NCBI RefSeq assembly: GCF_000143415.4
Contig: NW_003314376.1
Span: 467,271-531,270 of the forward strand
Source: Selaginella moellendorffii
Taxonomy: Eukaryota > Plantae > Lycopodiophyta
Direction: 5' to 3'
Length of the DNA stretch: 64,000 nucleotides
Shown: positions 37,801-57,341 of the stretch, piece after piece
Numbering within the stretch: the stretch's first letter is position 1
Layout: the number at the start of each line of letters is the position of its first letter
Notes under the pieces: model-generated
Told to the model about the DNA's origin: nothing
Seen by the model: only the letters and a program-made list of their open reading frames with translations
Database searches by the model: none
Program-made: the position numbers and the translations under genes

Positions 37801-38908
37801 AAGGCCACCTCAGCGAGAACTCTGGCTGCATCTCAAGTTGCAGGGTTTCTCTACGGCTTCTGCTTCTTTGCACTCTACAACTTCTATGCCCTCTGCATCT
37901 GGTATGGAGGAACACTACTGGTAGCAAGAAGAATAACCTTCCAGAATTTTGTGATCTGCTACAGCGCTCTGGTGTCCGCCGGGCGAGCACTAGCAGAGAC
38001 CGCAGCAGCAACTCCAGCAGTGGCTCATGGCTTGACAGCAAAAGCATCGGTCCTCGAGATACTCAACAAGAAAACAACAGTTTCCGACGTAGAAATGTCT
38101 GGAAACGAAGACAACATGCGAGGCGAGGTGGAGTTTCGCGACGTCAGCTTTACGTATCCCTCGAGCATGGAAATACTGGTGTTAAAGAACTTCAGCATTA
38201 AAGTGGACGCAGGCCAGACTGCAGCATTGGTTGGAAGGAGCGGGACGGGAAAATCGACAGTCATAGCTCTGCTGGAGAGATTCTACGAACCAATAGCAGG
38301 CACAATTCTCCTAGACGGCAAAGACATCAGGAGCATCCACGTTCACACGCTCAGGAAACAAATGGCACTGGTAAACCAGGAGCCAGCTTTGTTCGCGATG
38401 AGCATCAGAGACAACATAGCGTATGGCCTAGACAACGCGACGGACGCGGAGATCATCGAAGCAGCAAGCGTAGCAAACGCACACACATTCATCAGGTACC
38501 AAAGAACTCTCCAAGAAAACTCTCTAAAGATGGATGCATGGCAGTGCTCTCCCGGAGGGATACGAAACAAATGCCGGCGAAGGAGGCGTCCTTCTCTCCG
38601 GAGGACAAAAGCAACGCATAGCAATCGCTCGAGCCGTGATAAAAAAGCCAGCGATTCTTCTCCTGGACGAAGCAACAAGCGCTCTCGACGGTGAGTCCGA
38701 GCGCACCGTCCAGCAAGCCCTGGACAAGATCGTGCACGGCAGCACGGCAAAGACGACGATCATCGTCGTCGCTCACAGGCTCTCGACGATCCAACACGCA
38801 GATCTCATCGCAGTGATGGAGAATGGCGGGGTTTCGGAACAGGGCAAGCATCAAGAGCTCCTGGCCAAGAATGGCCGATATTTCGCTCTGATCCACTCTC
38901 AGCTCTAG
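34871..38908 (+). CDS. ABCB: Full-size ABCB (MDR/P-glycoprotein) transporter, TMD-NBD-TMD-NBD (1201 aa, 9 exons)
   Basis: Exons 34871-35053, 35123-35174, 35233-35402, 35446-35903, 35957-36186, 36237-36547, 36598-37452, 37513-38495, 38545-38908 total 3606 nt, all GT-AG. Walker A GRSGSGKS / GRSGTGKS, signature [IL]SGGQKQR and Walker [11 protein letters not shown] each occur twice. Confidence 0.95.
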
Positions 38909-38951
38909 CAATCGAGGAGACGATCGATCCAGACGTACCTAGACATGCTAG

Positions 38952-38987
38952 CGCCTTGCCGCCTTGCCGCCTTGCCGCCTTGCCGCC
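38952..38987 (+). repeat. (CGCCTTGC)n 8-mer repeat between the convergent ABCB and CLE-like stops
   Basis: cgccttgccgccttgccgccttgccgccttgccgcc. Confidence 0.85.
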
Positions 38988-39068
38988 ATAAACCCTAAGT
39001 AGCTACATTGTGATAGAGATTGATACATATCATCGTTACTCGTTAGGGAGCTATATACTTCTTCCATT

Positions 39069-39508
39069 CTATCGAGCGTGAGGCTTCCAGCACGAAGACA
39101 TCTCTTTGACATGCGACGAGTAGGGATCCTCGGGACCATTTGGAACGTCTCGATCTGGCTTGGCGACCACCGCCGGAGGATCATTCGATGATGGAGCGGT
39201 CTGGAAGTCTCTCCCGCCGCAGCCGCTCGTCCTGTGCTTCATCCGGTACTGCTCCGGATCGTCAGGGCCGGATGGAGTCTCTCTTTCGGGATTGGAAACC
39301 ATCTTCCTCGACTGGACTGGTCCTGCACCAAGAGAGAACAGCCACACCCGTTAGTATCTCGGATCATCTCGAGAAAAAATCGAATTTTTTTCTTCTTTTT
39401 TTGCTCTGGAACGAACGAACCTCCTCCAAGGCAGCGAGTCATGAGTGGAAAAAGCAGGAGGAGGATGATAGCCACAACACGGTGGCTGCTTTTGGCGGAT
39501 GGAGTCAT
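39069..39508 (-). CDS. Secreted CLE-like precursor with two elongated CLE-variant motifs (113 aa, 2 exons)
   Basis: Exon 39508-39421 encodes a signal peptide (MTPSAKSSHRVVAIILLLLFPLMTRCLGG). Phase-1 GT-AG intron, then exon 39322-39069 with SRKMV, RETPSGPDDPEQY and RDVPNGPEDPYSSH. Confidence 0.75.
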
Positions 39509-40124
39509 GGCTTTGGCAGTGATGATGGCCAAAGAAACAGCACAGGAGCTAGCTTAATGATTCGAAGCACAGCACAAGTTACACAGAGCAACGCATCATT
39601 CACACCTCCAAGCACAGCGTCACAGAGAAAAAAAAAAGTTAAAAAGAATCACAGAAAATGGAGGAGCAGAATCATACAACTCTACACTTAAAAACCACTC
39701 AACTCTCGTCCAACGATCGACAAAGATCTCTCTAGAACACAAGCAGACCTCAACAAAACGGCCCTTTGCCACTCCCACTCCACAAAGATCCCGCAAGAAC
39801 ACGCCGTATAAATACCCGAGCGACGATGAGACCTTTGCTCGAGGTACTAATCCGTGCTTGGTTTCTTCGTTTCTTCCTCTTTCGTGTCTTGTCTTGTCCA
39901 TCTTTTTAACACACACTTACACACACACACACAGCGCACAAAGCCTTTTGTTTCCAATTCCAACACGGCCAGACAGACACACACAGAAAGATGGAACACA
40001 GCTTTTGCATTCATTCCTGATTTGAGAGCTCTCTCGTTTAACGCATGAGGGATGGATTTAACGGAACGAATTGGGCAATCAAAGCACAGAATCGTTGGAA
40101 GAATAGAAGGAGTCACAGACAAAA

Positions 40125-40168
40125 TGGTGGCGGTGGTGGCGGTGGCGGCGGTGGCGGTGGCGGTGGCG
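40125..40168 (+). repeat. (GGT/GGC)n trinucleotide repeat
   Basis: ggtggcggtggtggcggtggcggcggtggcggtggcggtggc. Confidence 0.85.
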
Positions 40169-41059
40169 AAGTTTTGGTGGTGGCGAGCAACGTAGCAGCT
40201 TTCCAGGCAGACAAAACTTACAGGAAAGAAAAGCTCGCTCCTGCAGAGGAGACAAGCCTCCACAGATTCCAAATGATTCCTGCCCGGAGCTTGCGAGCCT
40301 GCTTGGCTTGGATACAAAAAATCCCACTCGCATCCCACTATAACAAAAAAAAAACCAGTAACGATCAAAGAAGAACATTTCATGGCTTGTGGAAAGCCTA
40401 CAAAAGCAAGACAACCAACTTGTTTTTTTCTAATGTTGTGTCGTGTGGCTTCTTTTGGAGAATCAATGTCTCTCGTAGATTCTACTGCGGAAACTCCTTG
40501 TTTAATCCCCGCAATGTTTTTCTGTGAGGCAATGGCATGGAATCTCTGGGGCGAGGAGATCGATGCGTGCTGTCTGTCTGCCTGTCTCTCTGTGTCGAGT
40601 TGCTTGCATTATGCTCGAGATCCATGGCGTTGCTCGCTGTGAATTCTTGCGAAGAACAAACCTTTGCTCCCGGACTTGTTGATGGGTGTTTCTATGATTT
40701 TCGTGGAAACACTAGTAAACAATGGGGAATTTGAAAGCACAATCCAAGGATTCCCTATGATTGAGCTCACGTTCCACCCGTCTTTATCACTTGGACTGTT
40801 CAACAGCCAAAGTTTCTTCCATATTCCAAAGTTCTCTTGCATCTTTCTTGTCGATTTTTGGTACTGTAGAACTACCAACAATGTCGTGACATAAGCTGGT
40901 GCTATATTGTAATTTTTCAAAAGTCATTATATACATATTTCAGAAGTTCCAAAATTGATTTTTTCTTTTCTTTTTTTTCTTTCGAATCTTCTTTTGCCTG
41001 GCATATTCCCAAAATGTAAAGGACGAGAAAAAAACGGAGAATGAAGCTCGTTTTTTTTT

Positions 41060-41653
41060 TCAGTTCAAATCGGGAATGAGCATGGATGGAGGCGTCGACC
41101 TGTGATGTAAAGGATCAGGGCCCCCAGGAACATATCGATCCGGGTGGTCGATTTGATGAACTTCGCGAACTTCACTGGATCGATTCACATTCACAAGTTT
41201 GCGATCATCACCCCCGTGGTGATTCTCAATTGCTACCGCTGCTGCTGCTGCTGCTGCTGCTTGGTACTCGAGCATCTTTCTTCCCACAAGCTGATTGCTC
41301 TCCGGGTGATCCCTGCGTGGTCGCGGTGGGATCCTCTGGCAAGAAGAACTCGTTAGAGTCTCCAAGAGAAGGAAGAAAACTTTCAAATGCTTTCACAAAC
41401 CTGCTGGTGGCGGAATCGCGTCCGGAAATTTGGCACATTTCTTGGGAAAGAAACGCAGCCGGGACAGGGGCGTGTCACCGCCAGCAGCTTCCGAGCCGAG
41501 ATCCCCCGAGAATCGAAATCTAGAAACCACCAAAAACCAATCAATCAAGCACGAGATGACCCAAAAGAGCACACCTGTAGTGACCAAGAGGTAGAAACAA
41601 CACACGAAAGCCATCCAGAACAGAGCGCTGTGGATCATCGCAGCGCGCGACAT
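41060..41653 (-). CDS. CLE: CLAVATA3/ESR-related (CLE) peptide precursor (157 aa, 3 exons)
   Basis: Exons 41653-41575, 41519-41401, 41335-41060 with GT-AG introns of 55 and 65 nt. Hydrophobic N-terminus, ARKLL and GRKML motifs, canonical dodecapeptide RYVPGGPDPLHH at 41137-41102. Confidence 0.92.
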
Positions 41654-41811
41654 GGACGATCGATCCAGAAAAACCAGAAGAGGAAAAGGAATGATCGATC
41701 AAGAAAAACAGAGAAGCTCCAGTACTTTTGAGTCAGTCTTGGCCAGTCCACTCTCCCTTCTTCTTCTTCGACTTAACAAGCATGACCAAATCTATGGAGC
41801 AATCTAACAGG

Positions 41812-41819
41812 CTTTATAG
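41812..41819 (-). promoter_or_regulatory. Candidate TATA box of the CLE gene
   Basis: CTATAAAG on the minus strand ~160 bp upstream of the ATG, followed by a GA-rich leader. Confidence 0.45.
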
Positions 41820-42759
41820 TAAAACACTGGAATTTGGGAACTCGTGACGAATACAAGGAAATAATTAAAATAAATACCCCAACTAATTCACTTTAAAAGC
41901 CTTTTTTTTTCCTTTAAACTGAATGTAAGATTAGGAAGGAACTGATTACCGACCGATATAGTTGGTCTAGATTAGTTCGAGTCCTATCAACCACACGCTC
42001 CAATCCATCATTCCAAGGGTTTTTAGTATTTCCAATTGCAGGGTGGCGGCAACTTAAGAGCCCTAAATCGGTGCATGCATGGTGGCGGTGACGAGACATT
42101 CCCTCATTTGGGGTGTGCGTGCCACCAGAGTTGATTTCCAAATGTGGCAACCCCCGGGTGCATCATTTGTACACTCCATGGTACATGGAGTATTTTTACT
42201 ATGTCCAAGGTTCACACATTCCAGGCTTTAATAGCTTGGGTGCTAATATGATGGCCGCGAATATGTGTCCGGCCGTAAAGGAATAATTTCCATATCCGAA
42301 AATATCAATCCTATTACGCCTCATCATTTCCGTCCCTGGAATAATCACCCTTGATCACGGGAAGAAGAATCGGAGAATTTCTCGTTAGTCTTGCTCTGAT
42401 ACAAAGCTGCCAAGGCATAAAAGAATCCAATCAATCAGTTCTCTCAGAGAAAAGCTCTCGAGTCTCTCTCGCGCGCACAAATACGTACCTGTCGATTCTT
42501 TGGAACGGTGAAAACTTATCTGATTGTTGTTCTTTATTGAGTAGCGTTCTTGAACAAAAGTACTTCACTCTATTGTCCGGTGAGTTGCCCTTTGACGTAA
42601 GCATGATCAACTCTAAAGCACGAATCTTTCCATAAAGAAGGGATATAAATCATCACAGATGTGAGTGAGAGAGAGAGAGAGAGAGAGATATTCCAAATGT
42701 TTAAGCTTTCTGTGTGCTCAACAGCTAAGGATGGATTAGTATCAATACTTACAGTTTCT

Positions 42760-44130
42760 GGAACACGATACTGGTTAGGAAACCTTGTTTGGCGTCTACT
42801 CTCTTTGATCGCTTCCCGGAAAGGAATGTGATCTCCTGGACGACGATGCTCGCAGCGTATGCCATATTGACAAAACTCGCGAGATCTTCAATTCAATGCC
42901 GGGTCAGTCATGGAACTCCATGATATCGGCTTACGGAAAGCCAAGTCTAGATCGTAGGCGCTTTTGGGTTGGATGCACGGAACGCGATCTCAGATCGGCC
43001 ATGGAGCTCTATCACTTGATGCCGGCATATGATCTTGTGTCGTGGACTGCAATGCTCTCATGGCGTGCTCTTGCCGGGGAATGCGATGCTGTCTGCCTAA
43101 TCTTCGCCACTTGAACGGGTCGATTCCATGCCAGAAGCATTGTTTCCTGGGGGGCGATGATTGAAAGCCATGAATTTTTTTAAAGATTCTATGCGAGATT
43201 CTATGGCGTGGCCTCCAATGCTTACAGCATATGCCCGGTTTGGGCATCTTCAAGTGGCAAAGATCATTTTTGATGTTTTGCATGAGAAGGGACGCAATGC
43301 AATGCTGGAAGCGTACTCAAATAACGAACGTGTTGGCGAGGCCGAGGAATTATTTTTTGTGGGTTTGCTCGTACACACCTTTCTTGGTTGCAGCATATGC
43401 CCTATATGGGTACGATGCCGCAGCGAGATGTTCGATGCTTGCTCGTAACGGCTACCATAAACTCTAGGAGATAATGCAGCAGCCTGTTGAGTCGAGCTTT
43501 GCTTCCGTGCTGAATGCTTGCAGCCACGCCAGGAATGTAGAGGGTGGCATGACTCTGGATTACGGATTTATCCCCACGAACCAGCAGTATGGGCCTACGT
43601 TGGAGGTACCAAGAATGCTTTCGTTCCGGGTGGAAGTGATCCGGCGAAGCTCGTGTTTCTTCCTTTGCGATCGCCCCGGGGAGTTCACCATATTCCCTGC
43701 TTGCAAACGCGTTCTCGATCACATAGACGAATCCCTCGATTTTGTGTTCTTTGAGCACGCACTGAAGCGTCCTCCACGACACGACGTGTATATATAAGTG
43801 TGTATTTATATGGTTGTAACATCTATATAGTCTGCCTTTCCTTTGTTTACAGCATCAATCTTTGACCTTTCTATATAGCTGTATGTACTAAGGCGAGCTC
43901 AATATTGAGAGGAATACAGCTTCTGCGAACTCCAGGAGACTTTCAAATGTGGCAGAACTCCCTTTTGCAAACTTTTTCTGACCGTGAAAAATTCTCTTCC
44001 TCTTGTGAGGACGTGATGATCACAGCCTACACTGAATCACGCGGTGGAGCATGGATAACTTTCATCTATGGAATCAGAATCCAAATATCCCACAGAGTCG
44101 GTATCTGCATCTGAATATTCTAGAAAATGG
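42760..44130 (+). pseudogene. Inverted decayed duplicate of PPR-B plus spacer and PPR-A relic (mirror of ~29600-31400)
   Basis: DLRSAMELYHLMPAYDLVSWTAMLSW, RDSMAWPPMLTAYA and LDYGFIPTNQQYG. 43760-44000 is the reverse complement of 29735-29975; NQ-insert relic at ~44070-44120. Confidence 0.9.
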
Positions 44131-44249
44131 AATCGGCTGCCATATTCGTCAAGGAAGAACGATATATATCAATCTCTAGGCCTAGACTCCATCACAATGT
44201 TATTTAGGATTTATGGCGGCACTGCGGCAAGGCGCTAGCAACCCTAGTT

Positions 44250-44920
44250 ACGTTTTCCTCCTCGATTGCTAGAGCTGAGAGTGGATCGGAGCGAAGTATC
44301 AGCCATTGGGCAGTAGCTCTTGTGACTGCGATGAGATCTCCGGCCGGATCGTCAACAACGATTGTCGTCCAGGGCTTGCGAGACGGCGGACTCGGACTCA
44401 CCATCGAGAGCTTGTTGAGAAGAATCGTGGCTTTTTTTATCACTGCTCAAGAGCTTGCTTTTATCCTCTCGAGAGAAGGATGGCCCCCTTCGCCAGCATT
44501 TGTTTCGTATCCCTCTGGTAAAGCACTGCCATGCATCCTTCTTTCTTTGTTACCTGATAAATGTGCGTTTGCCTTGTCTTCCATACGATCTCTCATGCTC
44601 ATTGCAAACAAAGCTGGTTCCTGGTTTACCAGTGCCATTTGTTTCCTGAGCGCATTTCCATGCTCGAGAGATACGCAAAGCTGACGTTGCAAAACTCCAC
44701 CTCGCCTCACATGTCTTCGTTTCCAGACATTTCTATGTCTAAAACTGCAGTTTTCTTCTTGAGTATCTTGAGGACCGATGCTTTTGCTGTCAAGCCATGA
44801 GCCACTGCTGGGGTTGCTGCTGTGGTCAGTGCTCACTCCACAGACACCAGAACGCTGTAGCAGATAAAAAAAATGCTAAAAGGTTATTCTTCTTGCTACC
44901 CATAGAAGTTCTAGAGTGCA
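44250..44920 (-). pseudogene. Inverted decayed copy of the ABCB 3' end (~37870-38920)
   Basis: [39 protein letters not shown] and IKKATILL; last intron retained; many deletions. Confidence 0.9.
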
Positions 44921-45399
44921 AAGCTGTACATGGGCTCCTTTGAATTTTTTTTATAATATGTTTTATAATTATTTTTATATAAGAATATATACTATTATTT
45001 TTTTTGGGTTTGTTTTAATCCAAAAGGAGATGGAATGGTTAATGCTTCAAATCCAAATATGAGTGGCATTATCTACTTAGATATTTTGTATCACTTATTG
45101 AAACTTTACTCTAATCATGTGGCTAGGGTACTTTAGTGATGGAAGGTCATGAGACTTGTGTTGGTTGCTGTGTTTTGAAATGTTATTTTAAAATCCTTAA
45201 TAGTGGAAAGAAAAAAAATGGTCCTTTTACTTGGTAATGGGTATAGTGATAGTGGAAAGAAGAAGGATGGTCCTTTTACTTGGTAATAAGTATTGGTGAT
45301 TAATGGAATTTAGTGGATGGGCCTTTAAGCCCTAACTCAATATAAACACTATTGTGAATAAAGAAAGACTTGGTGGGGATCAAAAAAGAAGTATTAAAG

Positions 45400-46950
45400 A
45401 ATGGTGTTCACCTATATCTTAGGACATCATAAGAGTGGTTATAAAATGACCACACCTAAAATGGATGGTTTGGTTCTGGAGAGACAAGTTTGTTATATGG
45501 GTGGTTTTATATTACTAATGAGATAATGAGAATAAATAAAGCTTTAGCATAAAAGGTTGGGATATTAGTAATACCTTTGGGTGTTTGCAACTAGATTTGG
45601 ACATATAAAACACTTCGACCAAGTGCAAATGTAATGTGGCCTTTGGGACTTAGCAAGTACCTTAAGATAGAATGAGAACTTATGAAGGTTATAAGTGAAA
45701 CTCCTCTAAATGGATGAAAATGTAGTTAAGTGACTAAGGTAAAATAAAAATTTAATCACTTACATAATGTTGATATTCTTTCTTAAGATCTTTTTTTTTC
45801 TTCTCTCTTTTCTCTTGTTTCTAAAGGGCCTATTGTTTCACCATCAGTAGATTTTTTGGATGAGAATTTTGTACCATTAATGGTTACCATATTTGATGCT
45901 AATAACAATAAGATGTAAAGTTGGATTTACCTTCTTTAAATGAATGAGCTATAGATCAAAAACTTCTTAATGAGTTTAACAATTTTGCATCACTTTTTAA
46001 TAACTTGTCATTTTGGCATTTACATTCTTAATATCTCCTTAAGAACAACTTTTTTTTTTACTTTATGGAGATTAATTCTAATGACCATTTACAATTAGTA
46101 ATATTTTTAATCTTTATTCCACACTTCCTCCATATTTACTATAACTCCTATTTTAGGTAGGTATATAGGATATTGTCATATGACTGAAAAGTTATGCAAG
46201 TCTTTCTATAGGCTAGAAATATGATATAATATCATTTAATATGTGCATAGTTGCATTCAGTGCTAAGTTTGTAAAACTTTCCTTTGTATTGCGGAAGAAT
46301 AATTGAAGTCAATTGTAGTTTTCCATTTATTTGAGATGGTGGGGTTTGATCTTTTCAATAGTTGACTATTAACAATGAGTATGCCATTATTATTTTTAAC
46401 TGCTTAACTTAATAGTTTTACTAGTGTGTTTGGGAATGCTATAAGATATTTCTTCCTCAATTGAAATATGGTGTTTTAACATATAATTTTCACCCTTTAC
46501 TTTATGATGTTTTACCATAGAATAACCATAGAGTGGAAGTTTGGACATGTGGGCCAAGGGTAGCTAATCGAAGCATGGAACGACTCTTGAGCATATAACC
46601 TAAAGAGAAAAAAGATAAAAGTATGAAGTAACTTTGGAATAGTTCTAGAGTATCTAACATCCTATTGTTAGAACCAACATGTAAAATAGAGTTAAATGGA
46701 GTTTGACACCATTTCAGCATACTAGTAGTTTAATGCGAGGACATAAGTACATCACCAACTATATGGTATGGAACTTGGGTTTAAACTCAAGTTAGACATA
46801 AAACAAAGGTAAACACATAAGTAGGAAGTAGACTATACTTTAGGTTGATCAGCCATATCCAACCTTATTATAAATTTGGAACCCACCCCTTATATGTAGC
46901 ATGCTTTGGGCTTTCATACTAGGAGTTAGTTTTTGGAACAATTATAAAAA
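45400..46950 (+). mobile_element. Degenerate gypsy integrase-region relic, inverted relative to ~15300-16300 and ~18000-18700
   Basis: tgtgcatagttgcattcagtgctaagtttgtaa (~46243) resembles the reverse complement of ~15728-15760; AT-rich and stop-riddled. Confidence 0.55.
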
Positions 46951-48799
46951 CTTACTAAATATAGAATGATGTTAGATTGCAAATCTACAGTCTAAGTACA
47001 CTTGAAATATTTATTAACTCCACTAACATAAGAGGGTTTGATAAAGAGTCTAGCAATATCAATTTTGCCATCATAGCAATAAAAGAATATAAAAAAAGAC
47101 TCACCAATAAGTAATATTGATACCCGCAGTCTCATTCACAACAGTCTTTGAGTGCAGGCCACTCTTGAGCTCATGAGCTAAGAAGTTGAGCTCACGAGTT
47201 GAGTTCAAATTTTAATTGTAATTTAATACAAATTATAAACTTAAATATTAAGGTTGTGGCAAACCTAATAATTTCACAACTCTCTACAAATTATATAGAT
47301 AAAAATGTTCTAAAGAAATATTCTTGTTCTAACAATTTAAATATTAATTATATGCCATAATAGGGATGTTTGTTAGAACATAAAATAAGATATTTGCAGA
47401 AAAAGTATTCTTGTCACTTCCTTAAATCTATACTCTATACTTTCTGGCTAGTAAATATCAAGTTTGTCAAAATTTAAAAATTATTAAATTTTAAAAAAAA
47501 ATTATATAAGACCATATAACCATTTGAAAGGAAAAAACCAACTGTTGATGTAATCTTGTTGTATATAAAATAGAGACTTAGTTTTTCTCTTGAATACATT
47601 TTTAAGGGGTTTGCTATAGTATAGTATTTAGAATTTATAAATCTTCACTTGCACTTTTATTCTAAGAGAGGGAAATATATATAAACATCAGTAGGTTCTA
47701 TTGGTAATTTTAACTTTTGCAATCTTTCTTCCCAGAGTGGTAATTCAAGGGCTAAAAGTTGCAATAGTCGTCCCATTGCACAACACAATCAAACCATACA
47801 AGAAAAAAAAAAAAGGATAGTGAAGATAGTGATTAAGAGTTGGAAATAAATATAATGACAAAGGGTGCATCAAATTGAGTAAAAAAGAATGCTCTTATAT
47901 TTATTTTAGGAAATTGCAATTTTGTGACTTTCAAGAAATGCCTTATATGTTTTTTGGCTTTCAGTGGAAACAATGGCAATGATCAATATGATGGTATATA
48001 TGCTCTCACAACACACCCAAAAGACTACCATGAAATATTTTTTGAGATGCTAAAGACAGAAATTGAGATACATAAGTACTATGGGCAATATTGTGAAAAG
48101 AACACTTGCAAGTATATAAAATGAAAAGTGAAATGAAAAAATGTTTTTTATTAATTATATAGAGTATAATAGAATAAAAATTAATAATCTTGGAAGATCT
48201 AGTTAACTCCAAAAGTCTTCTGCAACTTAGCGAAAGTAAGGCTTGCTTAATATATATAAATATCCACTTTAGGATCTTAGTGTAATATGTTGATGAAGAT
48301 GTAATACATATACTTGCAAAGAGCATATGCTTTTTCATGTTCCTCACACTTCATGAAATCTAAACATGTGCAAAAAAGAAAGTCTTAAATGATGATTGTA
48401 TACTCTTCACCTTTTATTTTGATTATGTACTCCTTTGCAAGCGTAATGATGTACTGTATGGAGAGAATCTCACACTTAAGCATTTGAGCCAAGTTTATTT
48501 TACCATGCTTTTATTTGGAGACAGTATTAATAAATTTAACTACCTTACCTTTTTTTTTCTTGACTTTCTATGTATCTTTGTGGGAATAGTCTTGGTTTTG
48601 TTACTTATGTCTTCAACTTTCCTCTCAAGATTGAAATTAGATTTCTCAAAGTTTTCAATATCATCTGAGATGAGTGTGGCCCTATTAACAACTAACCATT
48701 CTTTAGGTATCACATTAGGTTTAGTCACTATAATGTCCTCCTTCCATGTGGCCTGAAGTGGCCTAAAGACATTATAGTGACTAAAGGCCACTTCATAAT

Positions 48800-51700
48800 G
48801 GCAAAATACTTGAGATTTTTGTGATCTGTCCAGACCGTTGTTTGATGGCCCGCCCCCTCCAAGAAACGACGCCACTCTCCAACAGAATCCACGATGGCAA
48901 GGAGCTCCTTGTCGTGGATTTCGTATTTGATCTCCGTAGGTTGGAATTTCCGAGAATGGAAAGTGACTGGGTGAAATTTTTGATCCGCTCCGAGTTGAGA
49001 CAGCATAGCATCGATGGCAAAGTCGGAGGTGTCAGCCTCGATGAAGAAAGGTTGTGAGGGATCAGCGTGAATCAAAACAAGAGTAGAACTGAAGGCCGCC
49101 TTGAGTGTGTTGAAGGCTTGCTGGGCAATAGCAAACCAAGAGAAGGGAACATCTTTGCGAGTGAGATGTGCGAGAGGAAGGACAATGTCAAAGTAGTGAT
49201 CAATGAATTTGCGGTAGAAGTTGGCAAAGCCAAGGAAAACCTAAACGTCTGACATTGATTGTGGAGGCTCCCATTCAAGAATAGTCTTGACTTTGGTAGG
49301 ATCCATCGTGATACCCTCAGGAGTGACAATGTACCCAAGGAACTCCACAGACTCCTGATCAAAGGAACATTTCTCAAGCTTCGCATATAGGCTATGTTCC
49401 CGCAGCTTCGCTAGCACCTTGCACACATGCTCGTCATGCTCCTCCTAAGTTTTTGAGTAGATGAGGATGTCATCAAGGTAGACAATCACTATCTGATCAA
49501 GAAACTCCCGAAAGACATCATTTGCCATGTGTTGGAAAACTGCTAGAGCATTTGTCAAGCCAAATGGCATGACAGTGTACTCAAAATGGCCATAGTGGGT
49601 TCGGAACGCAGTCTTCCATTCATCACCAAGCTGGATCCAGATTAGATTGTATGCTCCACGGAGGTCGATTTTGGTGAAGAAGCGAGCATTGCCAAGGCGT
49701 TCCAATAGGTCCGAGATCAGGGGTAGTGGATAATGGTTCTGAACAGTTACCTTGTTCAAATCTCGGTAGTTGATGATTAGCCACAAACTCCCATCCTTCT
49801 TCTTGACAAAGAAGACAAGTGCTCCAGCCAGGGACTCCAAATGTTGAATATACCCCGAGGCAAGGTTCTCATCCATGTACTCTTTGAGGGCCTTAAGCTC
49901 GGACGGGGATAACCCGTAGATAGGCCCCCACAAAGGTGACGTTCCTTCTTGTAACTCAATGGGACAGTCATAAGGCCGATGAACAGGTAGTACACTAGCT
50001 TTTTTCTTGTCAAACACATCCCCAAAATCATGATACTTCTTAAGAAGACTAACAAGAGAAACATGCAAAGCAAAAAGGAAAATAGATTCTTCATGAAGGA
50101 GTTTTTTCATAGTGATTCTGGAGATAGAAGGAGGTGTACAACTAAATGGAATGATGATACGAGGATACTATCCAGTGTAAGATGGAAGAGAGGAAAAAGA
50201 AGAGGGTGAAAACTTCATAGAGTTAGGAACAAAACCCCGATTTGAGTTTAGGGAACTTTTCTTGATTCGGACTCGATGAACAGCAGAAGAAGCCGTGGGA
50301 GATGGTGATGTGGTTGAGACGAGCCATAATTTCTTCCAATAGATCTGAAGTTGATGTAGTTGGAACCAAGGAAAGCCAAGCATCACAAAGGAGGACTTGC
50401 TGTTGATGACGTTGAAGGCAATATCGATGATGGTGGACCCGATGTGTACTCGAACGGGTAACGTTTCCCTAATTCCAGAAGATAGAGACACAAAATGCCC
50501 GCTAATGCCTTCAACCCTCAGATCCCATATGGTAGGAGAAAGAGGAACGTGAAGTCGGGTAGCAAAGTCCGTGTCCATGAAGCAGGAAGTTGCACCCGAG
50601 TCCAGTAGTGCCAGAGCCTTGAGTCCTAATTGTCCAATGAAAGAAAGGAGACATAGGATGCGGAAGTTGCAGGAATTGGTGGTGGCTTTGATAAAAGGTG
50701 GTGAGGAGCTTGATAAAGAAGAAAAGTGATTTTTATTCGGGGAGTCCAAACAGACAACTCCTACTCTATTTGGACAGTGTCATTTCCCGATTGTAACAGA
50801 GGTGGACTTTGAGGCAGAGTGAACTCAAGTAGTCGGGGAAGCTTCTTGGGACACACAGTTGCTTTGTGATTAGGATCAGCACAGTAGAGGCAAAGATTAT
50901 GAGATATTCGACGTTGCTTCTCAGCAGGACTCAATTTCCCTCTAATGAGTCGGGGAGTACCAGAAATATCCATCAGGACCGGAGCAGTAGGTTCAGGAGT
51001 ATGCCCCGAAGACTCAAGCTAGGATTCTTGAGTCTGGGACGGGAAAATGGCAGCGCGGCGACTTTCCTGATGACATTCAAAGAGACGATTGTCACATCGA
51101 ACAACTTTGTTGATGGCGTCTGATAGATCCGTGGGATCCTCTATGGTGAGCAACAAATCCTTGACACTATTATTGAGGCTAAAATGAAATTGATCAATCA
51201 AGGCCCACTCATCCCACTGAGTGTCCAAAGCAAGGAGTTGGAACTTTGCAGCATAGATCAATGCAGGATGAGACCCTTAAGAGAGACGTCTCATCTTTGT
51301 GGTGGCAACTCAAACCCGATCTGTGTCGCCAAAACATACTTCAAGCTTCTCTTTGAACAATTGAAGATCCATCAGCTCCGGAACCACGACCCCTTTCATG
51401 CTCTTTTCCAAGAGAGGAGAAAACTATGACAAAGCTACACCTTTGAGCAACGTCCTAATTGCGCCGATTTGAGACTCAAGAGTGGGGTACCGCTGATGTT
51501 GAAGTGCGAAGATCAGCTCTATCTAGTTCAGGAATCCGCGAAGCTCCGAATGCTTGCTTAAAAATTTTGCCGGGAAACTCACTTTCAGTTCAAGAACCTT
51601 GCTGGATCCTTGAGCCGAAAGTGAAGCAAGCTCCTACTGCATGCGAAGAAGGGTCACCTTCAGCTCAGTATTCTCAGACTGGATTTTTGCAAGGACTTTG

Positions 51701-52244
51701 GCAAAGAAATCAGGATGGCTTGGAGACTCCATCAGCAAAGAAGAAAGAAAAAGGGGGAAAAAAGACAAAGGCAGTCAAACAATCAAAACGAGTTAAAGTA
51801 AAAAATGAAAAAAACACAATCTGAATCAAACTGTCAAAACCCTCAACAAGATCAAAACTGAAAAATGCAGAAGACAAAGAGAAAAGTTAGTGGAAACGAA
51901 GAAAAAGCCTTAGACTGGCGTTGATTCAGATTGTGGAAAAATGGTACAAGGCTAACCTATATATATTATAGGTTGATGAAGCTCCACCACTTTTGGATCG
52001 AGGACGGCCTAAATATAGCTAAGGTCGAGGAGGCACCACATCATCATCAGGAATGTGGCTCGAGACTTAGGAATCGTACGGGAAATCAGAGAGTGAGGAA
52101 TAGGGAAGTGTCTCGAGAGTCAGGAATAAGGAAGTGTCTCGAGAGTCAGGAATAGAGAAGTATCTCAAGAGTCAGGAATGTGGTCTGTAAGTCAGGAATC
52201 CGGCGAGAGTCAGGAATGTGGCAAAAATTGGGGGATTCCTGACA
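48800..52244 (-). mobile_element. 3'-truncated Ty3/gypsy LTR retrotransposon of Tf1/sushi/Tcn1 type (5' LTR, gag, PR, RT, RNase H; integrase missing)
   Basis: Zn knuckle CLYCADPNHKATVC, protease ALLDSGAT, RT KIDLRGAYNL..GDEWKTAFRT..MPFGLTNA..YLDDILIYS, RNase H EADTSD..YEIHDKELLAIV..TDHKNLKYF. A few stops and frameshifts. Confidence 0.93.
51832..52244 (-). repeat. 5' LTR (413 bp) of the gypsy element
   Basis: Termini TGTCA...TGACA, TATA-rich box at ~51958-51970, and U3 tandem gagagtcaggaat repeats at ~52060-52220. Confidence 0.8.
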
Positions 52245-52739
52245 GTGCATAATGATTTGCATCACATGTCATTTTATAAAGTTTTGATGGATTAGCAATG
52301 CATTAGAGCCTTACTCCATAACTATTTCAATTCTACAAAACTATCCTTTTATGGCTTCTTCCACTTAAATAACACATTTTTATGCTACAAACTTGCATTA
52401 GAAATGTCAATAATAACTAGCCATACTAAAAATATTATGTAACTCGATCACTAAAGTTAGTGTATGCTAACTTTCTATCACAACCACCTTCCTTAAATTT
52501 GTCTTAACACCCTTAAATGTTATACTACTCCACTATAAGCAACCAAAGAGAACAACTTGAAAAGCGATCCATGAAGTTCAAATATAGAGGGAAAGGGTCC
52601 ATAAATAAAAGTGCACCCTTTTTTACAATTAGTTAAGGGTCTTGGGGTAGTTGGGGTTAAGCGTGCTTGGGTTTGAATAGTATTGAGCTGGGTGACTTTC
52701 TGAGAAGTCCAAATTTAAGAGGTTACATCCACCTTTAAC

Positions 52740-54400
52740 TTTGCAAATTTATATTTGCATTTCTTCATATAAGGTTTGTGACAATATAACTTATGCTCCA
52801 TATAATTGCTTAAAATAAGAATATCATTCAAAAAAATCTCCACAAACTCGTGAAGATAATACCTAAACACCTCCATCATCAACAAAGTAAATATGGCTGG
52901 TGCATTCCTCAAATCAAATGGCATAATTATGAATTTAAAATGTTTAAAGCTCATATTGAATACCATCTTGGAAATATATATGTCATTTATTGCAATTTGA
53001 TGATATCCACTCTTTATATTAGTCTTGATAAACATTTGGGCTTCATCAAACTTGTCTAAAGTATCATCCATATGTGGTATTAGTATGTTATCCTTCACTA
53101 TTTTTTTATTCAAAGTATATATTGAGCCATCCTTCTTTACAAGCAAAACCAATGTGCCAAAAAAAGATATACTTAACTAAATAAATCTAAACTCAAGTAA
53201 TTGAAATGCTAAATAGAGGTTGTTGCACCTTTTATCATTAAGGCATACTCTTCAATAAACTTTGCTAAAACAAAGTTGTCAACACTCTTACTATCTAATA
53301 AACTTTCACTAGACCACCACAAAACACACTCTTCAGCATTAAAGTTAATGCAAAAGTGTGTTTAACCTCTATTTTATTCCATATAGACAAGTAAGGATTA
53401 AAAATCTCTTCATTCAACTAGAACAATCTTCTTTATCATCCTCATGTTGCAAAGTTTTGCAACTCTCCAACTTACCATCACTAGAAGATTAATAATTTTT
53501 CTTACTCTACTATTTGTTCTTCAGTTATGGATAATAAGCTTTGTAGTGTTCAATCTCACCACAATAGTGTATAATTCTTTACAAAGAACTTTAGTTTTTT
53601 TGACCCCTTCACATCCAAAGTAGCCATCACAAATTTCAACTTATGATATTTGTTCTTATCTTTGTATTCACAACAATCATCATAATGATTCTTGACTAAA
53701 GGACTCCTCAAATGCTTGTGAGACCTATGCTTATCATTGTCAAGTCTATTAAAGAGCGCCTGTAAAGTTTTTATAGGTTGGGAGTAATGCAAATCTAATC
53801 AAGCAAGTAAGGTTCTTAATAGTGTTATTTTCCCTTGCTGAAAATGTCAAAGTTCCCTGTGAGCATTCTTTATGTTATAGTGAGGGGTAAAACATAAATA
53901 ATAAGCAACCTTAAACTCATCTATAGTAGACACTACTGATTTCTTGTTTGCAATATGAAACTCCTCAAGTTAATTCCACCATCAAAGACTTGCATCACAC
54001 AAACCTTTAAAATAGCCATTAACATCTGGAGTTCCTCTACCAACCAAGAACTTCTTCATATTAGCTAACCAAGCTAAACATTTGTTCACACCATTATCAC
54101 TGGAAAAAGTTGAAATCTTGAGTTAATCCACCAAGAAAGTTTTACTTGGATCACCATCACTACTAGCTTCAAGTCCCTCAACACACTTGTTAGCCATTAT
54201 GCCATACATTGCCTTTTGCATGTTTTGTTGATTTTTATTGAAGGTTCCTAGTTTATGAATAACATCATAGATAGTCTAAACCTTTGTAACTCTATCAACA
54301 TCACCATTAACACTACTATCAACAATAAAATTCCAACATTCATCTTGGTTAACCATTGCAACCAACTCCTTTAATACTAATGTTATAATCTTGTGCTAAA
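52740..54400 (-). mobile_element. Older degenerate gypsy gag-RT remnant
   Basis: ORF 52715-53152: LLVKKDGS..KSGYHQI..FIIMPFDLRNAPAIF..FLNDILI (catalytic YxDD decayed). Confidence 0.8.
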
Positions 54401-54659
54401 TAACAAAGGCAAAGAGGTCAACTAGACTATGTTATACCTTTTTTTAAGGTTCCTCACCACTCAACCACCCCAAGTTACCTCAAAAGCTCCACCACACCAC
54501 CACTCAATTGTGAGCCCCTTAAGTTAAAGAAAAGATGATGGAAACTTCAACTTATAGTCAAGCATAAAAATCTCTAAACTTTAATAGCTGTTAGGCAACA
54601 ATATAAATTTAGGGTAAAGCATTTTTTTTCAATAACTATTATTTAGGAAGTCAACTATT

Positions 54660-55350
54660 TTATTGATATATGGCACATATTTTAATTATAAAATTATTCA
54701 AAAGTTGGCAACTCAACAGCTAGTTGATGGTTTAAATACTACTCCATCACCCCTTATATTTAAGCCATCTACTATTGAAAGTAAGCAACAATATCTTCCA
54801 TTTCTAAAGGTGGCAACATATCAAGGTGAAAGTCTTGGTCATTTTGGCCTTTGTGAGGCTGAGATAAAGTTGACATTAGAAGTCATATATTATCACCTTC
54901 ATAGACAACTGTTGTCAAATTTTTAACAGGGAAAACTGAGGCTTTGTATGAGTTTAAACTTTATTGTGCCAAAGCTTTCAAGTATTTTCACTCAGATGGT
55001 TGTGAAGAGTATATGTTACAAGCTTTTCTGAATTATTAGATCAAACACTAATTCACTATAGTTTATACTCCACAGTACAATGAAGTAGGTGAGCATATGA
55101 ATTGAACTTATTGAGACTAGATGTACTATGCCTTATGTTGCTAGATTGCCTAAAAGTTTCTAAACTCTACAACACTATGTTCTTACTACTGCCGTAAAAG
55201 GATCAACCCTCTCTGTCAATTTCGTTGTATTGCCTATGCTAGTAAACTTTGGCTCAAGTTTGATTCAAAAATACAAAAGTCTATTTTAATGAGATATAGT
55301 TTTGATATTAAAAATTATTTCTTAAGCTAAATATTATTTTCAATGAGTAA
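54660..55350 (+). mobile_element. Degenerate Ty1/copia integrase remnant
   Basis: cactcagatggttgtgaagagtat (HSDGCEEY, cf. RSDxGGEY) and tatactccacagtacaatgaagta (YTPQYNEV, cf. YTPQQNGV). Confidence 0.6.
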
Positions 55351-55366
55351 CATGTTTCTAAGAGTT

Positions 55367-55501
55367 GATATTTCTGGTCAACTATAGTCAACAGAGTCTG
55401 CATCTGAGGATGCAATTGATGATGATTCATCACAATTGTGATGAATCAATGAATTTTGACTCTGTTGACTATAGTTGACCAGCAATATCACCATCAATTG
55501 C
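55367..55501. repeat. Fold-back inverted repeat with a central 26-bp perfect palindrome
   Basis: 55367-55398 vs 55458-55489 are 31/32 complementary; TGATTCATCACAATTGTGATGAATCA at 55423-55448. Confidence 0.9.
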
Positions 55502-55888
55502 CACACACACCACATCTTCAAGGAGCACAACTCCATGTTATGACATCAACTACCAACTCAGTAGTCCATGCCATATGAACATATTGCACCAAATCCCTAT
55601 CTCCCCAAGGAATGGTAGGAAGTTGTTATCAGAGGTGGTCATATTATCTACAGTTGCAAAGGACATGGAAAACATCCTCAACTTGGGAAAAGTTGCAAAC
55701 TTGGCAAAGGTGAAGATAAACTCAAAGCCCATCTCAACATAGGTGGTGCTTATCACATCTGTATGTGGCAACATTGACCTTAGACCAACTCGGCCATCTC
55801 AACTTCTTGTTTAATATTAATCTCGTGCCAACTTTCACGTAAATTTATTCATCGTGACAAAATTTGTAACAAAGATACAAAGATCTTG

Positions 55889-56537
55889 TCATGGAAAGCT
55901 TGTGTCAATCCTGTGATGGATGGGTTTGCGACCAGTCGGAGCGTTTCTCTCCGGCTCAACATTTATCATCTCGTTCTTGTCACCACGATTGATCGCGAGC
56001 GTGTGCGGAAATACCGATCCCTCACCAGCAGAGAGGGAATCCGGGAACAAAGATGGAGCTGGATGCCCGTTCCTGATCATCGCTTTCTGGCAGGCCAAAG
56101 ACGAGGAGAGCTCTTGAGGCGGTGGAGGAGTGGGACCAGCGAAGCCATTGTAATGGGGATCACAGTAATCATCAAACATGGGACCGATGCTTTGTGGAGC
56201 CGGAGACGCACCGATTTGCCCCGCGTCGTCCTTCGCAATGCTGCCCTGGTACTGCTTTGGGTCGGATACGGTGCCGCTTGGAACTTCTCTTGGCTCATGC
56301 TTCACAAGCTCAGCGCCGGTTTGAAACAACTTTCTGGGCACTCCTCGCTCCTGATGGAGGCAAAATCGTTTAACACAGAGCCATTCCCTGGTTAGAAGAC
56401 AGAAAAGAGAGATTTATCATTGAAAGCCTTGCCTTGGGACCAAGAAGAGAGCGATCGAGCGATGCAGTCGCAGTGGAAGCGGTCGCAATAGAAGCGCCCA
56501 GAAGCAGCATTGAGACGATACTGACAATCGTGAACAT
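55889..56537 (-). CDS. Secreted multi-motif CLE-like precursor (188 aa, 2 exons, GC-AG intron)
   Basis: Exon 56537-56433 encodes MFTIVSIVSMLLLGASIATA..GPK; donor AG|GCAAG; in-phase acceptor at 56351. Exon 56350-55889 carries PRKLF, REVPSGTVSDPKQY, DYCDPHYN and C-terminal RNAPTGRKPIHH. Confidence 0.75.
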
Positions 56538-57341
56538 CTTTCTCCGGCCATGATCATCAGAAAGAGAATGAGAAGGAAAAAAAATCTCTCTAGCAAGCGG
56601 TGTTTAGCATGGCTGCTTGGAGAAAAGCCACTTGTGTGTGCTTCACGTCGATTATCTTCGACCATGGATTGATCTCAGTCGCTCAGGATAGTTTGGGAGA
56701 GCTCAAGATCTGATGAACAACATGCTATTTCTCCCTCATGAGGCTCCAGCCAGAAGCTCCGTCGCCATATCCTTAGAGCAATGTTGTCCAAATTGCTATT
56801 ACTGTAGGGATTCACGACATTAAATACTCTCCGTTTGCTTCGGGGTTTGGATCTTGCCCTAAGAAATCAGCATAAAGTTGACAAAGAATTCTTGAGTTCA
56901 GACTTGAATGCGCGTTCTGAATGCTGCCTGGGTTGTCCAGTCCAATTGCGCGTTCTGACATGTGGATAATGCTCCAGCGATATCAACGTGCATGCTACCG
57001 CTTTACAAATGTACTTCCAATGGATCCTAAGTTATATCTCAACCAGAACACGATCCATATAAAGAAGGATACAATAGAATTATGAAATCAAAGTTCTCTC
57101 CCGAGTACAAATCAATCATGGAGCTACCCAAAGTCCACTCAAATCACAATGCAGCTAAGTATGTACCAAGAACATAGAAAAGTGCAAGTGTGTATGTGTG
57201 TCTAGTGTGCGTGAGGAGAGAGCAAAAATTGAATGATATACCTGAGAGGTGGTACCACCACCATCACCACCAAAGAGAATTTCCATTTCCATCCATCTCC
57301 TCCCTGTGATCCATCCCCAAAATCTCCAAAAGAATCGGACA

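What the first reader, a model, noticed from the sequence alone, without database searches (positions are those of the whole stretch)
39069..56537. Co-oriented cluster of three peptide-hormone precursors: one canonical CLE and two multi-motif precursors sharing an elongated CLE variant
Seen: three minus-strand genes (39069-39508, 41060-41653, 55889-56537). Each has a signal-peptide exon and an RK[LM]x motif (RKMV; RKLL/RKML; RKLF). Their CLE-type motifs are mostly preceded by xP[DE] (HPD, NPE, KPD, EPE). Two genes share RE[TV]PSG-x(2-3)-DP[EK]QY (RETPSGPDDPEQY; REVPSGTVSDPKQY). Known: CLE peptides are 12-13 aa, RxVPxGPDPxH[HN], and multi-CLE precursors exist but usually repeat canonical motifs. 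Inference: local duplication produced a subfamily of longer, Tyr-terminated CLE-derived ligands, possibly a lineage-specific signalling system; ~11 kb of retroelement debris later split the cluster. The raw ORF track misses all three spliced models.
Basis: partly seen in the sequence, partly recalled or inferred. Interest (0 to 1): 0.88.

Follow-up and report, generated by a model that had tools for sequence, protein, structure and literature searches.

The report
Spikemoss CLE cluster with variant motifs
In the spikemoss Selaginella moellendorffii, the known CLE hormone gene SmCLE5 lies between two overlooked relatives of another known CLE gene, SmCLE7; all three relatives share a CLE-like motif one residue longer than normal, one of the two new genes is transcribed and spliced as predicted, the other may be decaying, and no activity has been shown for the variant motifs.

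Summary
The window is the last 64 kb of S. moellendorffii scaffold GL377680.1.

- **Gene 2 (41060-41653)** is the catalogued SmCLE5 (Sm411648, RYVPGGPDPLHH).
- **Gene 1 (39069-39508)** is NCBI's "uncharacterized protein" LOC112342690. RNA confirms its intron and both SmCLE5 introns.
- **Gene 3 (55889-56537)** is not annotated as a gene. It needs a GC-AG intron that I could not test. Its terminal CLE-like motif loses R1 and G6 in the other haplotype.

The main new result is that the elongated motifs are not confined to this cluster. SmCLE7, on another scaffold, carries both of them (RLIPSGPSDPKQY and REVPTGPEDPF), followed by a conserved Cys, upstream of its canonical CLE. Gene 1 matches the N-terminal half of SmCLE7 and has no CLE. 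Gene 3 keeps motif A, but motif B and the terminal CLE have decayed.

Motif residues are invariant across these old paralogs (35-43% identity overall). No relative turned up outside this species.

I rate this a new variant of a known kind, of moderate interest.

First readers of this scan noted the same genes in overlapping windows and the other haplotype. They also noted similar multi-motif CLE precursors elsewhere in this genome.

The parts
39421..39508 (-). Gene 1 (LOC112342690) exon 1: signal-peptide exon MTPSAKSSHRVVAIILLLLFPLMTRCLGG, followed by a phase-1 donor
   Evidence: The spliced product is identical to NCBI XP_024520632.1 (P0005).
39323..39420 (-). Gene 1 intron, 98 nt, GT-AG
   Evidence: the joint 39321/39420 is seen in 2 contigs of X1, one X4 contig (depth 382), 1 read of X21 and 5 reads of X22.
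39069..39322 (-). Gene 1 exon 2 coding part. It holds RKMV, motif A RETPSGPDDPEQY (39246-39284), a Cys, motif B RDVPNGPEDPYSS (39114-39152), CW-KPH and the stop codon. There is no canonical CLE.
   Evidence: Homology to SmCLE7: BLASTP E 3e-12, library-wide phmmer E 7.5e-4.
37000..39068 (-). Gene 1 3' UTR and long-isoform exons (39068-38939, 37699-37468, 37294-37145, 37073 and below), antisense to the last exons of an ABCB transporter. The short isoform ends near 38577.
   Evidence: joints 38939>37699 (10 and 15 reads), 37468>37294 and 37145>37073. The X4 contig spans 38577-39645. Pfam ABC_tran/ABC_membrane hit the + strand.
41060..41653 (-). Gene 2 = SmCLE5 / Sm411648, 158 aa. Exons 41653-41575, 41519-41401 and 41335-41060. 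Canonical CLE RYVPGGPDPLHH at 41102-41137.
   Evidence: joints 41335/41401 and 41519/41575. Zhang et al. 2020 supplement gives the same 158-aa protein. SmCLE5 motif list.
56433..56537 (-). Gene 3 putative exon 1: signal-peptide-like MFTIVSIVSMLLLGASIATASTATASLDRSLLGPK
   Evidence: No RNA test was possible and no gene is called here.
56351..56432 (-). Gene 3 putative intron, 82 nt, GC-AG (AAG|GCAAGG ... CATCAG|GA), phase 0. A weak GT at 56440/39 would instead give phase 1 and a stop after 13 codons.
   Evidence: and direct reading. The donor is identical in the other haplotype. Not tested with reads.
55889..56350 (-). Gene 3 exon 2. It holds RKLF, motif A REVPSGTVSDPKQY (56249-56290), a PSY-like DYCDPHYN (56147-56170), a degenerate motif B region with Cys, and a terminal CLE-like RNAPTGRKPIHH (55913-55948).
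   Evidence: The other haplotype reads GNAPTRRKPIHH.
41900..55800 (.). Spacer. It holds PPR pseudogene pieces (42896-43445), an ABC-transporter fragment (about 44300-44900), LTR-retroelement protease, RT and RNase H (48731-50749), and a second RT piece (52718-53152).
   Evidence: The spacer is collinear in the other haplotype, with a comparable spacer of about 15 kb.

Best explanation
The stretch is an old, co-oriented cluster of CLE-family peptide-precursor genes in Selaginella moellendorffii.

**What each gene is**
- The middle gene is the ordinary R-type CLE gene SmCLE5.
- The two outer genes belong to the SmCLE7 subfamily. The full SmCLE7 precursor reads: signal peptide, phase-1 intron, RK[LM], motif A (R-x-x-P-S-G-x(2-3)-D-P-x-Q-Y), Cys, motif B (R-[DE]-V-P-x-G-P-E-D-P-[FY]), x(7-8)-C-W..KPH, a Ser-rich linker, and a canonical C-terminal CLE.
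- Gene 1 is a truncated paralog that keeps only A, B and the Cys/KPH tail. It is transcribed, spliced and has an intact reading frame in both haplotypes.
- Gene 3 keeps A. Its B motif and terminal CLE have decayed, and it may be on the way to becoming a pseudogene.

**Origin of motifs A and B**
A and B are internal duplicates of the CLE unit. They keep the P-[DE]-R lead-in and the R-x-x-P-x-G core. They have gained one residue before D-P and lost the His-His/Asn tail.

**Inferred mechanism (not shown)**
- The precursors enter the secretory pathway and are cut N-terminal to the Arg, as CLE precursors are.
- SmCLE5 would give a normal dodecapeptide for CLV1/BAM-type receptors.
- A and B would be released as 13-14-residue peptides, or as one Cys-bridged fragment. 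Without the C-terminal H-[HN] anchor they would not dock in the canonical CLE pocket. They would therefore act on something else, or modulate processing.

**Why I think A and B have a function of their own**
Their residues are kept in three paralogs that have otherwise diverged. Gene 1 also persists without any CLE motif.
For: Shown:
- Organism and loci. L003 equals window 64000-46675 at 100% identity.
- Gene 2 is Sm411648/SmCLE5.
- Spliced transcripts exist for genes 1 and 2.
- The spliced gene 1 product equals XP_024520632.1.
- The only library-wide relative of the gene 1 protein among 1.84 billion representatives is SmCLE7 (E 7.5e-4). Pairwise E is 3e-12 over 91 residues.
- Gene 3 exon 2 matches both ends of SmCLE7, with E 6e-5 at motif A and 4e-5 at the terminal CLE.
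- A collinear alignment of the paralogs has invariant R, P, S, G, D, P, Q, Y in motif A, plus an invariant Cys and His.
- Conserved motif residues use different synonymous codons in the paralogs. This fits an old split with constraint.
- Genes 1, 2 and SmCLE7 share a phase-1 intron just after the signal peptide.
- The motifs occur far above chance.

Inferred: secretion, the cleavage sites, peptide release, and failure to bind canonical CLE receptors. The last point rests on established knowledge that the C-terminal His/Asn of CLE peptides anchors them in the receptor, as in the PXY-TDIF structure paper listed (PMC4856767).
Against: - No relative was found outside S. moellendorffii, so long-term conservation rests on paralogs alone.
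- Haplotype comparison is close to neutral. Gene 1 has 4 nonsynonymous and 2 synonymous differences. Gene 3 exon 2 has pN/pS of about 0.7.
- One gene 1 difference falls inside motif A (T to A), although at a variable position.
- Gene 3 has no transcript evidence, no annotation of its own, an unusual GC donor, and an intron phase that differs from its paralogs.
- AlphaFold gives no structure (pLDDT 56).
- There are no peptidomic or bioassay data.
- In run X4, SmCLE5 is present only as an intron-retaining contig.
Confidence: 0.55

Rival explanations
1. Motifs A and B are not signals. They form a pro-region of SmCLE7-type precursors, for example a processing or sorting determinant, or a small disulfide-held spacer, that serves only the terminal CLE peptide. 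Gene 1 (lacking the CLE) and gene 3 (with a decaying CLE) would then be expressed relics of partial duplication with no function of their own.
For: - Gene 3's terminal CLE loses R1 and G6 in the other haplotype, and its C-terminal half has pN/pS of about 0.74.
- Gene 1 differs between haplotypes by 4 nonsynonymous and 2 synonymous changes.
- Oelkers et al. [quoted passage not shown]
- Two Cys are present in every mature region.
Against: - Gene 1 keeps 9 of 11 motif B residues and the motif A invariants, while the sequence between the motifs has diverged from SmCLE7 beyond recognition. A relic would not be expected to do that.
- Its reading frame is intact in both haplotypes, and it is well represented in RNA (contig depth 382 in X4).
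Confidence: 0.3
2. One reading: a locally born, lineage-specific signalling system of longer, Tyr-terminated CLE-derived ligands with a receptor of their own.
For: - The motif family is real, above chance, and shared by three paralogs.
- Gene 1 encodes only variant motifs and is expressed.
- No hit was found outside the species.
Against: - The module also sits in SmCLE7 on another scaffold, so it was not born in this cluster.
- Only motif A ends in Tyr. Motif B does not.
- The Tyr is in Q-Y rather than the D-Y context that the Furumizu et al. 2021 review describes for the sulfated peptides RGF, CIF, PSK and PSY.
- There is no receptor, peptide or activity evidence.
Confidence: 0.2
3. Gene 3 is a composite precursor that joins CLE-type motifs with a PSY-like sulfotyrosine peptide (DDYCDPHYNGFAGPTPPPP). 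This reading comes from other first-reader notes.
For: - DY..P..N matches the start of PSY1, DYGDPSANPKHDP, as quoted.
- It lies in a secreted-type precursor and is followed by a Pro-rich tail.
- It is unchanged between haplotypes.
Against: - The pattern is expected 0.185 times per window by chance (P = 0.165).
- In the paralog alignment this stretch falls in the spacer/motif B region of SmCLE7.
- It has a Cys at position 3 and lacks the His at position 11.
- Gene 3 itself lacks transcript evidence.
Confidence: 0.08

Closest known systems
SmCLE7 (BAH56538.1; NCBI XP_024543134.1, named 'flocculation protein FLO11-like, partial'), S. moellendorffii scaffold GL377618.1
   Same: It has a signal-peptide exon followed by a phase-1 intron, SRKLL, motif A RLIPSGPSDPKQYQNSI, a Cys, motif B REVPTGPEDPF, and ACW..KPH. 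Gene 1 aligns over 91 residues (E 3e-12). Gene 3 aligns at motif A and at the terminal CLE.
   Different: SmCLE7 also has a Ser-rich repeat linker and an intact canonical CLE, RQVPSGADPIHH. Gene 1 stops just after KPH. In gene 3, motif B and the CLE are degenerate. SmCLE7 lies on a different scaffold.
SmCLE5 (Sm411648), an R-type CLE of S. moellendorffii
   Same: Gene 2 is this gene: the same 158-aa protein with haplotype-level differences, and the motif RYVPGGPDPLHH.
   Different: None. It is a catalogued member.
Multi-CLE-domain precursors (rice CLE75/76, wheat CLE30/31, Medicago CLE68; Oelkers et al. 2008, PMC2254619)
   Same: Several CLE-type units sit in one secreted precursor, each with its own conserved lead-in.
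   Different: In those proteins the repeats are near-identical canonical 12-mers at regular spacing of about 30 residues. Here the internal units are a distinct, longer type without the H-[HN] end. Gene 1 has no canonical unit at all.
IDA/IDL and PIP/PIPL peptides (related Pro-rich, post-translationally modified peptide families recognised by LRR-RLK subfamily XI receptors)
   Same: They share a Pro-rich P-S-G-P-S-like core. SmCLE7 motif A contains SGPS. The Marchantia IDA peptide EVPPQGPSPIHN is quoted.
   Different: IDA and PIP peptides end in H-N or G-H. Motifs A and B end in Q-Y or in [FY]. I ran no alignment or profile test against these families, so this is a resemblance only.

Membership tests
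CLE (CLV3/ESR-related) precursor family | N-terminal secretion signal | tested here: met
   Each first exon has a hydrophobic core (Kyte-Doolittle 10-residue maxima of 2.7-3.7) and small residues before the junction. SignalP itself was not available. Gene 3's exon 1 depends on an untested GC-AG splice.
CLE (CLV3/ESR-related) precursor family | A 12-13-residue CLE domain near the C-terminus: R/H-x-x-P-x-G-P-[DN]-P-x-H-[HN] | tested here: met
   This row is for gene 2 only: RYVPGGPDPLHH at 41102-41137, listed as SmCLE5.
CLE (CLV3/ESR-related) precursor family | The same CLE domain, in gene 1 | tested here: not met
   No 12-mer fits the pattern. Both motifs have an extra residue (GP[DE]DP) and end in QY or YSS rather than H-[HN]. 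Gene 1 is related to a CLE precursor but is not a CLE by motif definition.
CLE (CLV3/ESR-related) precursor family | The same CLE domain, in gene 3 | tested here: inconclusive
   RNAPTGRKPIHH keeps R1, P4, G6, P9, H11 and H12 but has R-K in place of P7-D8. The other haplotype reads GNAPTRRKPIHH, which loses R1 and G6.
CLE (CLV3/ESR-related) precursor family | Peptide activity through CLV1/BAM/PXY-type LRR receptor kinases | not testable with these tools
SmCLE7-type subfamily (defined here) | Collinear RK[LM], motif A, Cys, motif B, C-[WQ] and a conserved His downstream (K-P-H in SmCLE7 and gene 1, N-G-H in gene 3) | tested here: met
   Gene 1 meets all elements. Gene 3 meets RK, A, Cys and C-Q..H, with a degenerate B.
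PSY (sulfated tyrosine peptide) family | D-Y-x-D-P-x-x-N-x-x-H-x-P core in a secreted precursor, conserved among relatives | tested here: inconclusive
   DYCDPHYN is present in gene 3. The loose pattern DY..P..N is not above chance (P = 0.165). His 11 is absent, and the paralogs have nothing comparable at this position.

The most novel reading that the evidence does not exclude
Motifs A and B of the SmCLE7 subfamily are bioactive secreted peptides. They would form a new ligand type that arose from CLE by a one-residue insertion and loss of the His/Asn anchor, and would be read by a receptor other than the canonical CLE receptors. Gene 1 would then be a dedicated precursor for them. That would capture one peptide-hormone family budding off from another inside a single precursor.
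Probability: 0.2. Interest if true: 0.7.

Novelty: new variant of a known kind. Interest (0 to 1): 0.45.

Why it matters
How plant peptide-hormone families (CLE, IDA, PIP and others) arose from one another is an open question. Most surveys score only the canonical 12-mer. They therefore miss internal variant units and genes such as gene 1 that have lost the canonical unit.

This locus together with SmCLE7 gives a concrete, testable series within one genome:
- a full precursor (A + B + CLE);
- a variant-only precursor (A + B) that is expressed;
- a decaying copy.

If A or B peptides are active, this would show neofunctionalisation of a duplicated CLE unit. If they are not, it documents a conserved pro-region of unknown role.

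There is also practical annotation value:
- SmCLE7 is misnamed FLO11-like.
- Gene 1 is unnamed.
- Gene 3 is missing, or fused to a neighbouring fasciclin gene in old models.

Tried and rejected
- **Pfam:** scanning the exon translations gave nothing relevant.
- **Gene 3 exon 2 against 5.8 billion proteins:** no hit within the length band. The only record containing it is an old chimeric model, P0010, found by way of the neighbouring fasciclin gene.
- **Exact look-ups:** the window's 241-aa fasciclin protein and P0009 are not on record.
- **Literature:** motif strings (GPSDPKQY, GPEDPF, SGPDDP, GPEDPY, SDPKQY, DPEQY, PSGPDDPEQY, VPNGPEDP) occur in none of the 8.4 million full texts. They also do not occur in the supplements of Zhang 2020 or Whitewoods 2018. 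Supplements of Furumizu 2021 and of the fern CLAVATA paper are not held. Goad et al. 2017 is not held. Miwa et al. 2009 was not read.
- **AlphaFold:** the gene 1 protein with a 6-row alignment gave pLDDT 56, pTM 0.19, and only the signal helix. This is uninformative.
- **ARAGORN:** no tRNA in 38000-58000.
- **The 121-aa call upstream of SmCLE5 in the other haplotype:** it is antisense to PPR pseudogene pieces and is not a peptide gene.
- **Chance origin of the motifs:** rejected.
- **Haplotype dN/dS as a selection test:** too few differences to decide.
- Gene 1's joined product was used only as the database record P0005/P0001. Gene 3's joined product was never built.

Full report
**Identity of the DNA.** Gene 1's second exon is 96% identical to an NCBI protein of Selaginella moellendorffii. 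The neighbouring fasciclin gene led to scaffold GL377680.1, whose last 17.3 kb equal window 64000-46675 at 100%. The window is therefore the terminal 64 kb of that scaffold. The second haplotype in the same assembly (GL377580.1; loci L001 and L004) is collinear with the window at 94-96% identity, with a gap in my coverage between about 46987 and 52244, where only a few hundred bases match.

**The observation.**
- Gene 1: exon 1 39508-39421 (MTPSAKSSHRVVAIILLLLFPLMTRCLGG), intron 39420-39323, exon 2 39322-39069. Exon 2 holds RKMV, NPE-RETPSGPDDPEQY and KPD-RDVPNGPEDPYSS.
- Gene 2: three exons (41653-41575, 41519-41401, 41335-41060), ending in HPD-RYVPGGPDPLHH.
- Gene 3: exon 1 56537-56433 and exon 2 56350-55889. 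It holds RKLF, HEP-REVPSGTVSDPKQY and EPE-RNAPTGRKPIHH.

In 200 local Markov shuffles of the window, R..P.G.{1,3}DP was expected 0.17 times and occurs 4 times. R..P.G..P.H[HN] was expected 0.005 times and occurs twice. All hits are on the minus strand inside these models.

**Transcripts.** I laid two RNA-like contig sets from different studies and two stranded RNA-seq runs on window 37000-42900.
- The gene 1 intron (98 nt, GT-AG) is skipped in contigs of both studies (depth 382 in X4) and in 1 and 5 raw reads.
- Both SmCLE5 introns (65 and 55 nt) are skipped in an X1 contig and in single raw reads.
- In X4, SmCLE5 appears only as an unspliced contig (40992-41698, depth 268). That form would stop before the CLE motif.
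- Read direction and CT..AC joints place all of this RNA on the minus strand.

**What is already known.**
- Gene 2 is catalogued. The supplement of Zhang et al. 2020 (PMC7552357) lists Sm411648, 158 aa, motif RYVPGGPDPLHH, with the same three-exon protein apart from haplotype differences. The SmCLE1-15 motif list reproduced by Whitewoods et al. 2018 (PMC6089843) gives that motif as SmCLE5.
- Gene 1's spliced product is exactly NCBI XP_024520632.1, "uncharacterized protein LOC112342690". The other haplotype's copy is XP_024531451.1. It is in neither CLE list.
- Gene 3 has no gene call on this scaffold and no protein match. In the other haplotype an old JGI model (SELMODRAFT_441324) fuses the fasciclin gene to part of its exon 2.

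**The key new result.** A phmmer search of the gene 1 protein against 1.84 billion representatives found one relative only (E 7.5e-4). Its cluster contains BAH56538.1, "CLAVATA3/endosperm surrounding region 7", which is SmCLE7. It is encoded on another scaffold, GL377618.1.

After its signal peptide, SmCLE7 reads as follows:
- SRKLL;
- QPE-RLIPSGPSDPKQYQNSI;
- a Cys;
- LE-REVPTGPEDPFQRLKDFVACW....KPH;
- Ser-rich repeats;
- QPE-RQVPSGADPIHH.

Both elongated motif types therefore sit inside a catalogued CLE precursor, upstream of its canonical CLE.

Gene 1 aligns with the N-terminal half of SmCLE7 over 91 residues (E 3e-12). Gene 3 aligns at motif A (E 6e-5) and at the terminal CLE (E 4e-5). In the joint alignment, the invariant columns are RK, the R, P, S, G, D, P, Q, Y of motif A, a few Pro and Gly in the motif B region, one Cys and one His. 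Overall identity to SmCLE7 is only 35-43%.

Several conserved motif residues use different synonymous codons in the paralogs. This is what an old duplication with constraint on those residues would leave. Genes 1, 2 and SmCLE7 all have a phase-1 GT-AG intron directly after the signal peptide.

**Origin of the variant motifs.**
- A, B and the canonical CLE units all follow P-[DE]-R (E-P-R for gene 3's motif A, L-E-R for SmCLE7's motif B). All start R-x-x-P-x-G.
- A and B differ from CLE by one extra residue before D-P (GP-D-DP, GP-E-DP, GP-S-DP; gene 3's motif A has T-V-S-DP).
- They also lack the H-[HN] end.

Internal duplication of the CLE unit followed by divergence is the simplest reading. 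Known multi-CLE precursors repeat near-identical canonical units at regular spacing (Oelkers et al. 2008), so this architecture is a variant of that theme.

**Status of gene 3.**
- Its frame is kept only if the donor AAG|GCAAGG (GC at 56432/31) is used, which gives a phase-0 intron.
- A nearby poor GT at 56440/39 would give the ancestral phase 1, but the product would stop after 13 codons (and direct reading).
- Between haplotypes the first 74 codons of exon 2 show no change. This part includes motif A and the PSY-like stretch.
- The last 79 codons carry 7 nonsynonymous and 3 synonymous differences (pN/pS about 0.74).
- These include R1 to G and G6 to R in the terminal CLE-like motif.
- The reading frame stays open in both haplotypes.

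I put the chance that gene 3 is a functional gene at about 0.4.

**Selection between haplotypes.** Non-coding divergence in this region is about 1-4%, and about 2% over the longer stretches. Gene 1 has 4 nonsynonymous differences (L27V, V32I, M37L, and T45A, which makes RETPSG into REAPSG) and 2 synonymous ones. SmCLE5 has 2 nonsynonymous and 3 synonymous differences in exons 1-2. Exon 3 differs by one extra codon, and I did not count its point differences. These numbers are too small to show or exclude constraint.

**Spacer.** Between SmCLE5 and gene 3 lie PPR pseudogene pieces, a fragment copied from the neighbouring ABC transporter, and LTR-retroelement protease, RT and RNase H ORFs. The other haplotype has a comparable spacer of about 15 kb. 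The insertions therefore predate the split of the haplotypes. Their order relative to the gene duplications cannot be told.

**Mechanism.**
- Shown: the homology, the gene architecture, and transcription and splicing of genes 1 and 2.
- Inferred: secretion, cleavage before Arg, and release of A and B. Also inferred is their unsuitability for the canonical CLE pocket, because they lack the C-terminal His/Asn anchor.

Gene 1 persists with intact A and B motifs but no CLE unit. This favours an independent role for A and B over a pure pro-region role, and I give the independent-role reading about 0.55.

**Limits.**
- There was no search of other lycophyte genomes.
- SignalP was not available.
- AlphaFold gave no confident model.

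**Verdict.** This is a real, partly known CLE cluster. It contains a conserved, previously undescribed variant-motif module shared with SmCLE7, undescribed as far as the searchable literature shows. I rate it a new variant of a known kind, with interest 0.45.

Noticed in passing
window 37000-39322, minus strand: The gene 1 mRNA has a long isoform that splices from 38939 to 37699, then 37468 to 37294 and 37145 to 37073, and continues below 37018. It runs antisense across the last exons of the plus-strand ABCB transporter. In X21 and X22 these joints have more reads (10-16) than the gene 1 coding intron (1-5). The short isoform ends near 38577.
   Followed up: partly
window 40992-41698: Run X4 holds SmCLE5 only as an unspliced contig (depth 268), while X1 holds the spliced form. 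Retaining both introns would end the reading frame before the CLE motif.
   Followed up: no
window 55889-58067 and L004 10001-12507: Old JGI models are chimeric. SELMODRAFT_441324 (352 aa) fuses the fasciclin-like gene to part of gene 3 exon 2. SELMODRAFT_448310 (301 aa) extends the fasciclin gene with an unrelated tail. The NCBI model of 241 aa matches the plain ORF 57342-58067.
   Followed up: yes
L002 9878-10708 (GL377618.1): SmCLE7 is named 'flocculation protein FLO11-like, partial' by NCBI, probably because of its Ser-rich repeats. A complete signal-peptide exon (L002 9878-9953) and a 72-nt phase-1 intron are visible upstream of the partial model.
   Followed up: partly
window 56147-56170: A PSY-like DYCDPHYN lies in gene 3 and is identical in both haplotypes. 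The loose pattern is not above chance in this window (expected 0.185, P = 0.165).
   Followed up: partly
window 38659-38690: About 13 plus-strand-RNA reads per run match only these 32 bases, carry A>C at 38677, and continue into unrelated sequence on both sides. They probably come from another expressed ABC-ATPase gene rather than from this locus.
   Followed up: no
window 44300-44900 and 37920-38174: A fragment of the ABC transporter is duplicated in inverse orientation inside the spacer, at about 86% identity. Broken PPR ORFs lie next to it at 42896-43800.
   Followed up: partly
window 38945-38990: A short GGCGGCAAG-type repeat lies in the gene 1 3' UTR. The X4 contig lacks 8 bases here, which is a strain or allele length difference.
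   Followed up: no
window about 55770-55805, minus strand: The sequence GATGGCCGAGTTGGTCTAAGG resembles the 5' half of a tRNA-Ser/Leu just downstream of gene 3. ARAGORN calls no tRNA, so it may be a tRNA-derived fragment or a SINE head.
   Followed up: partly
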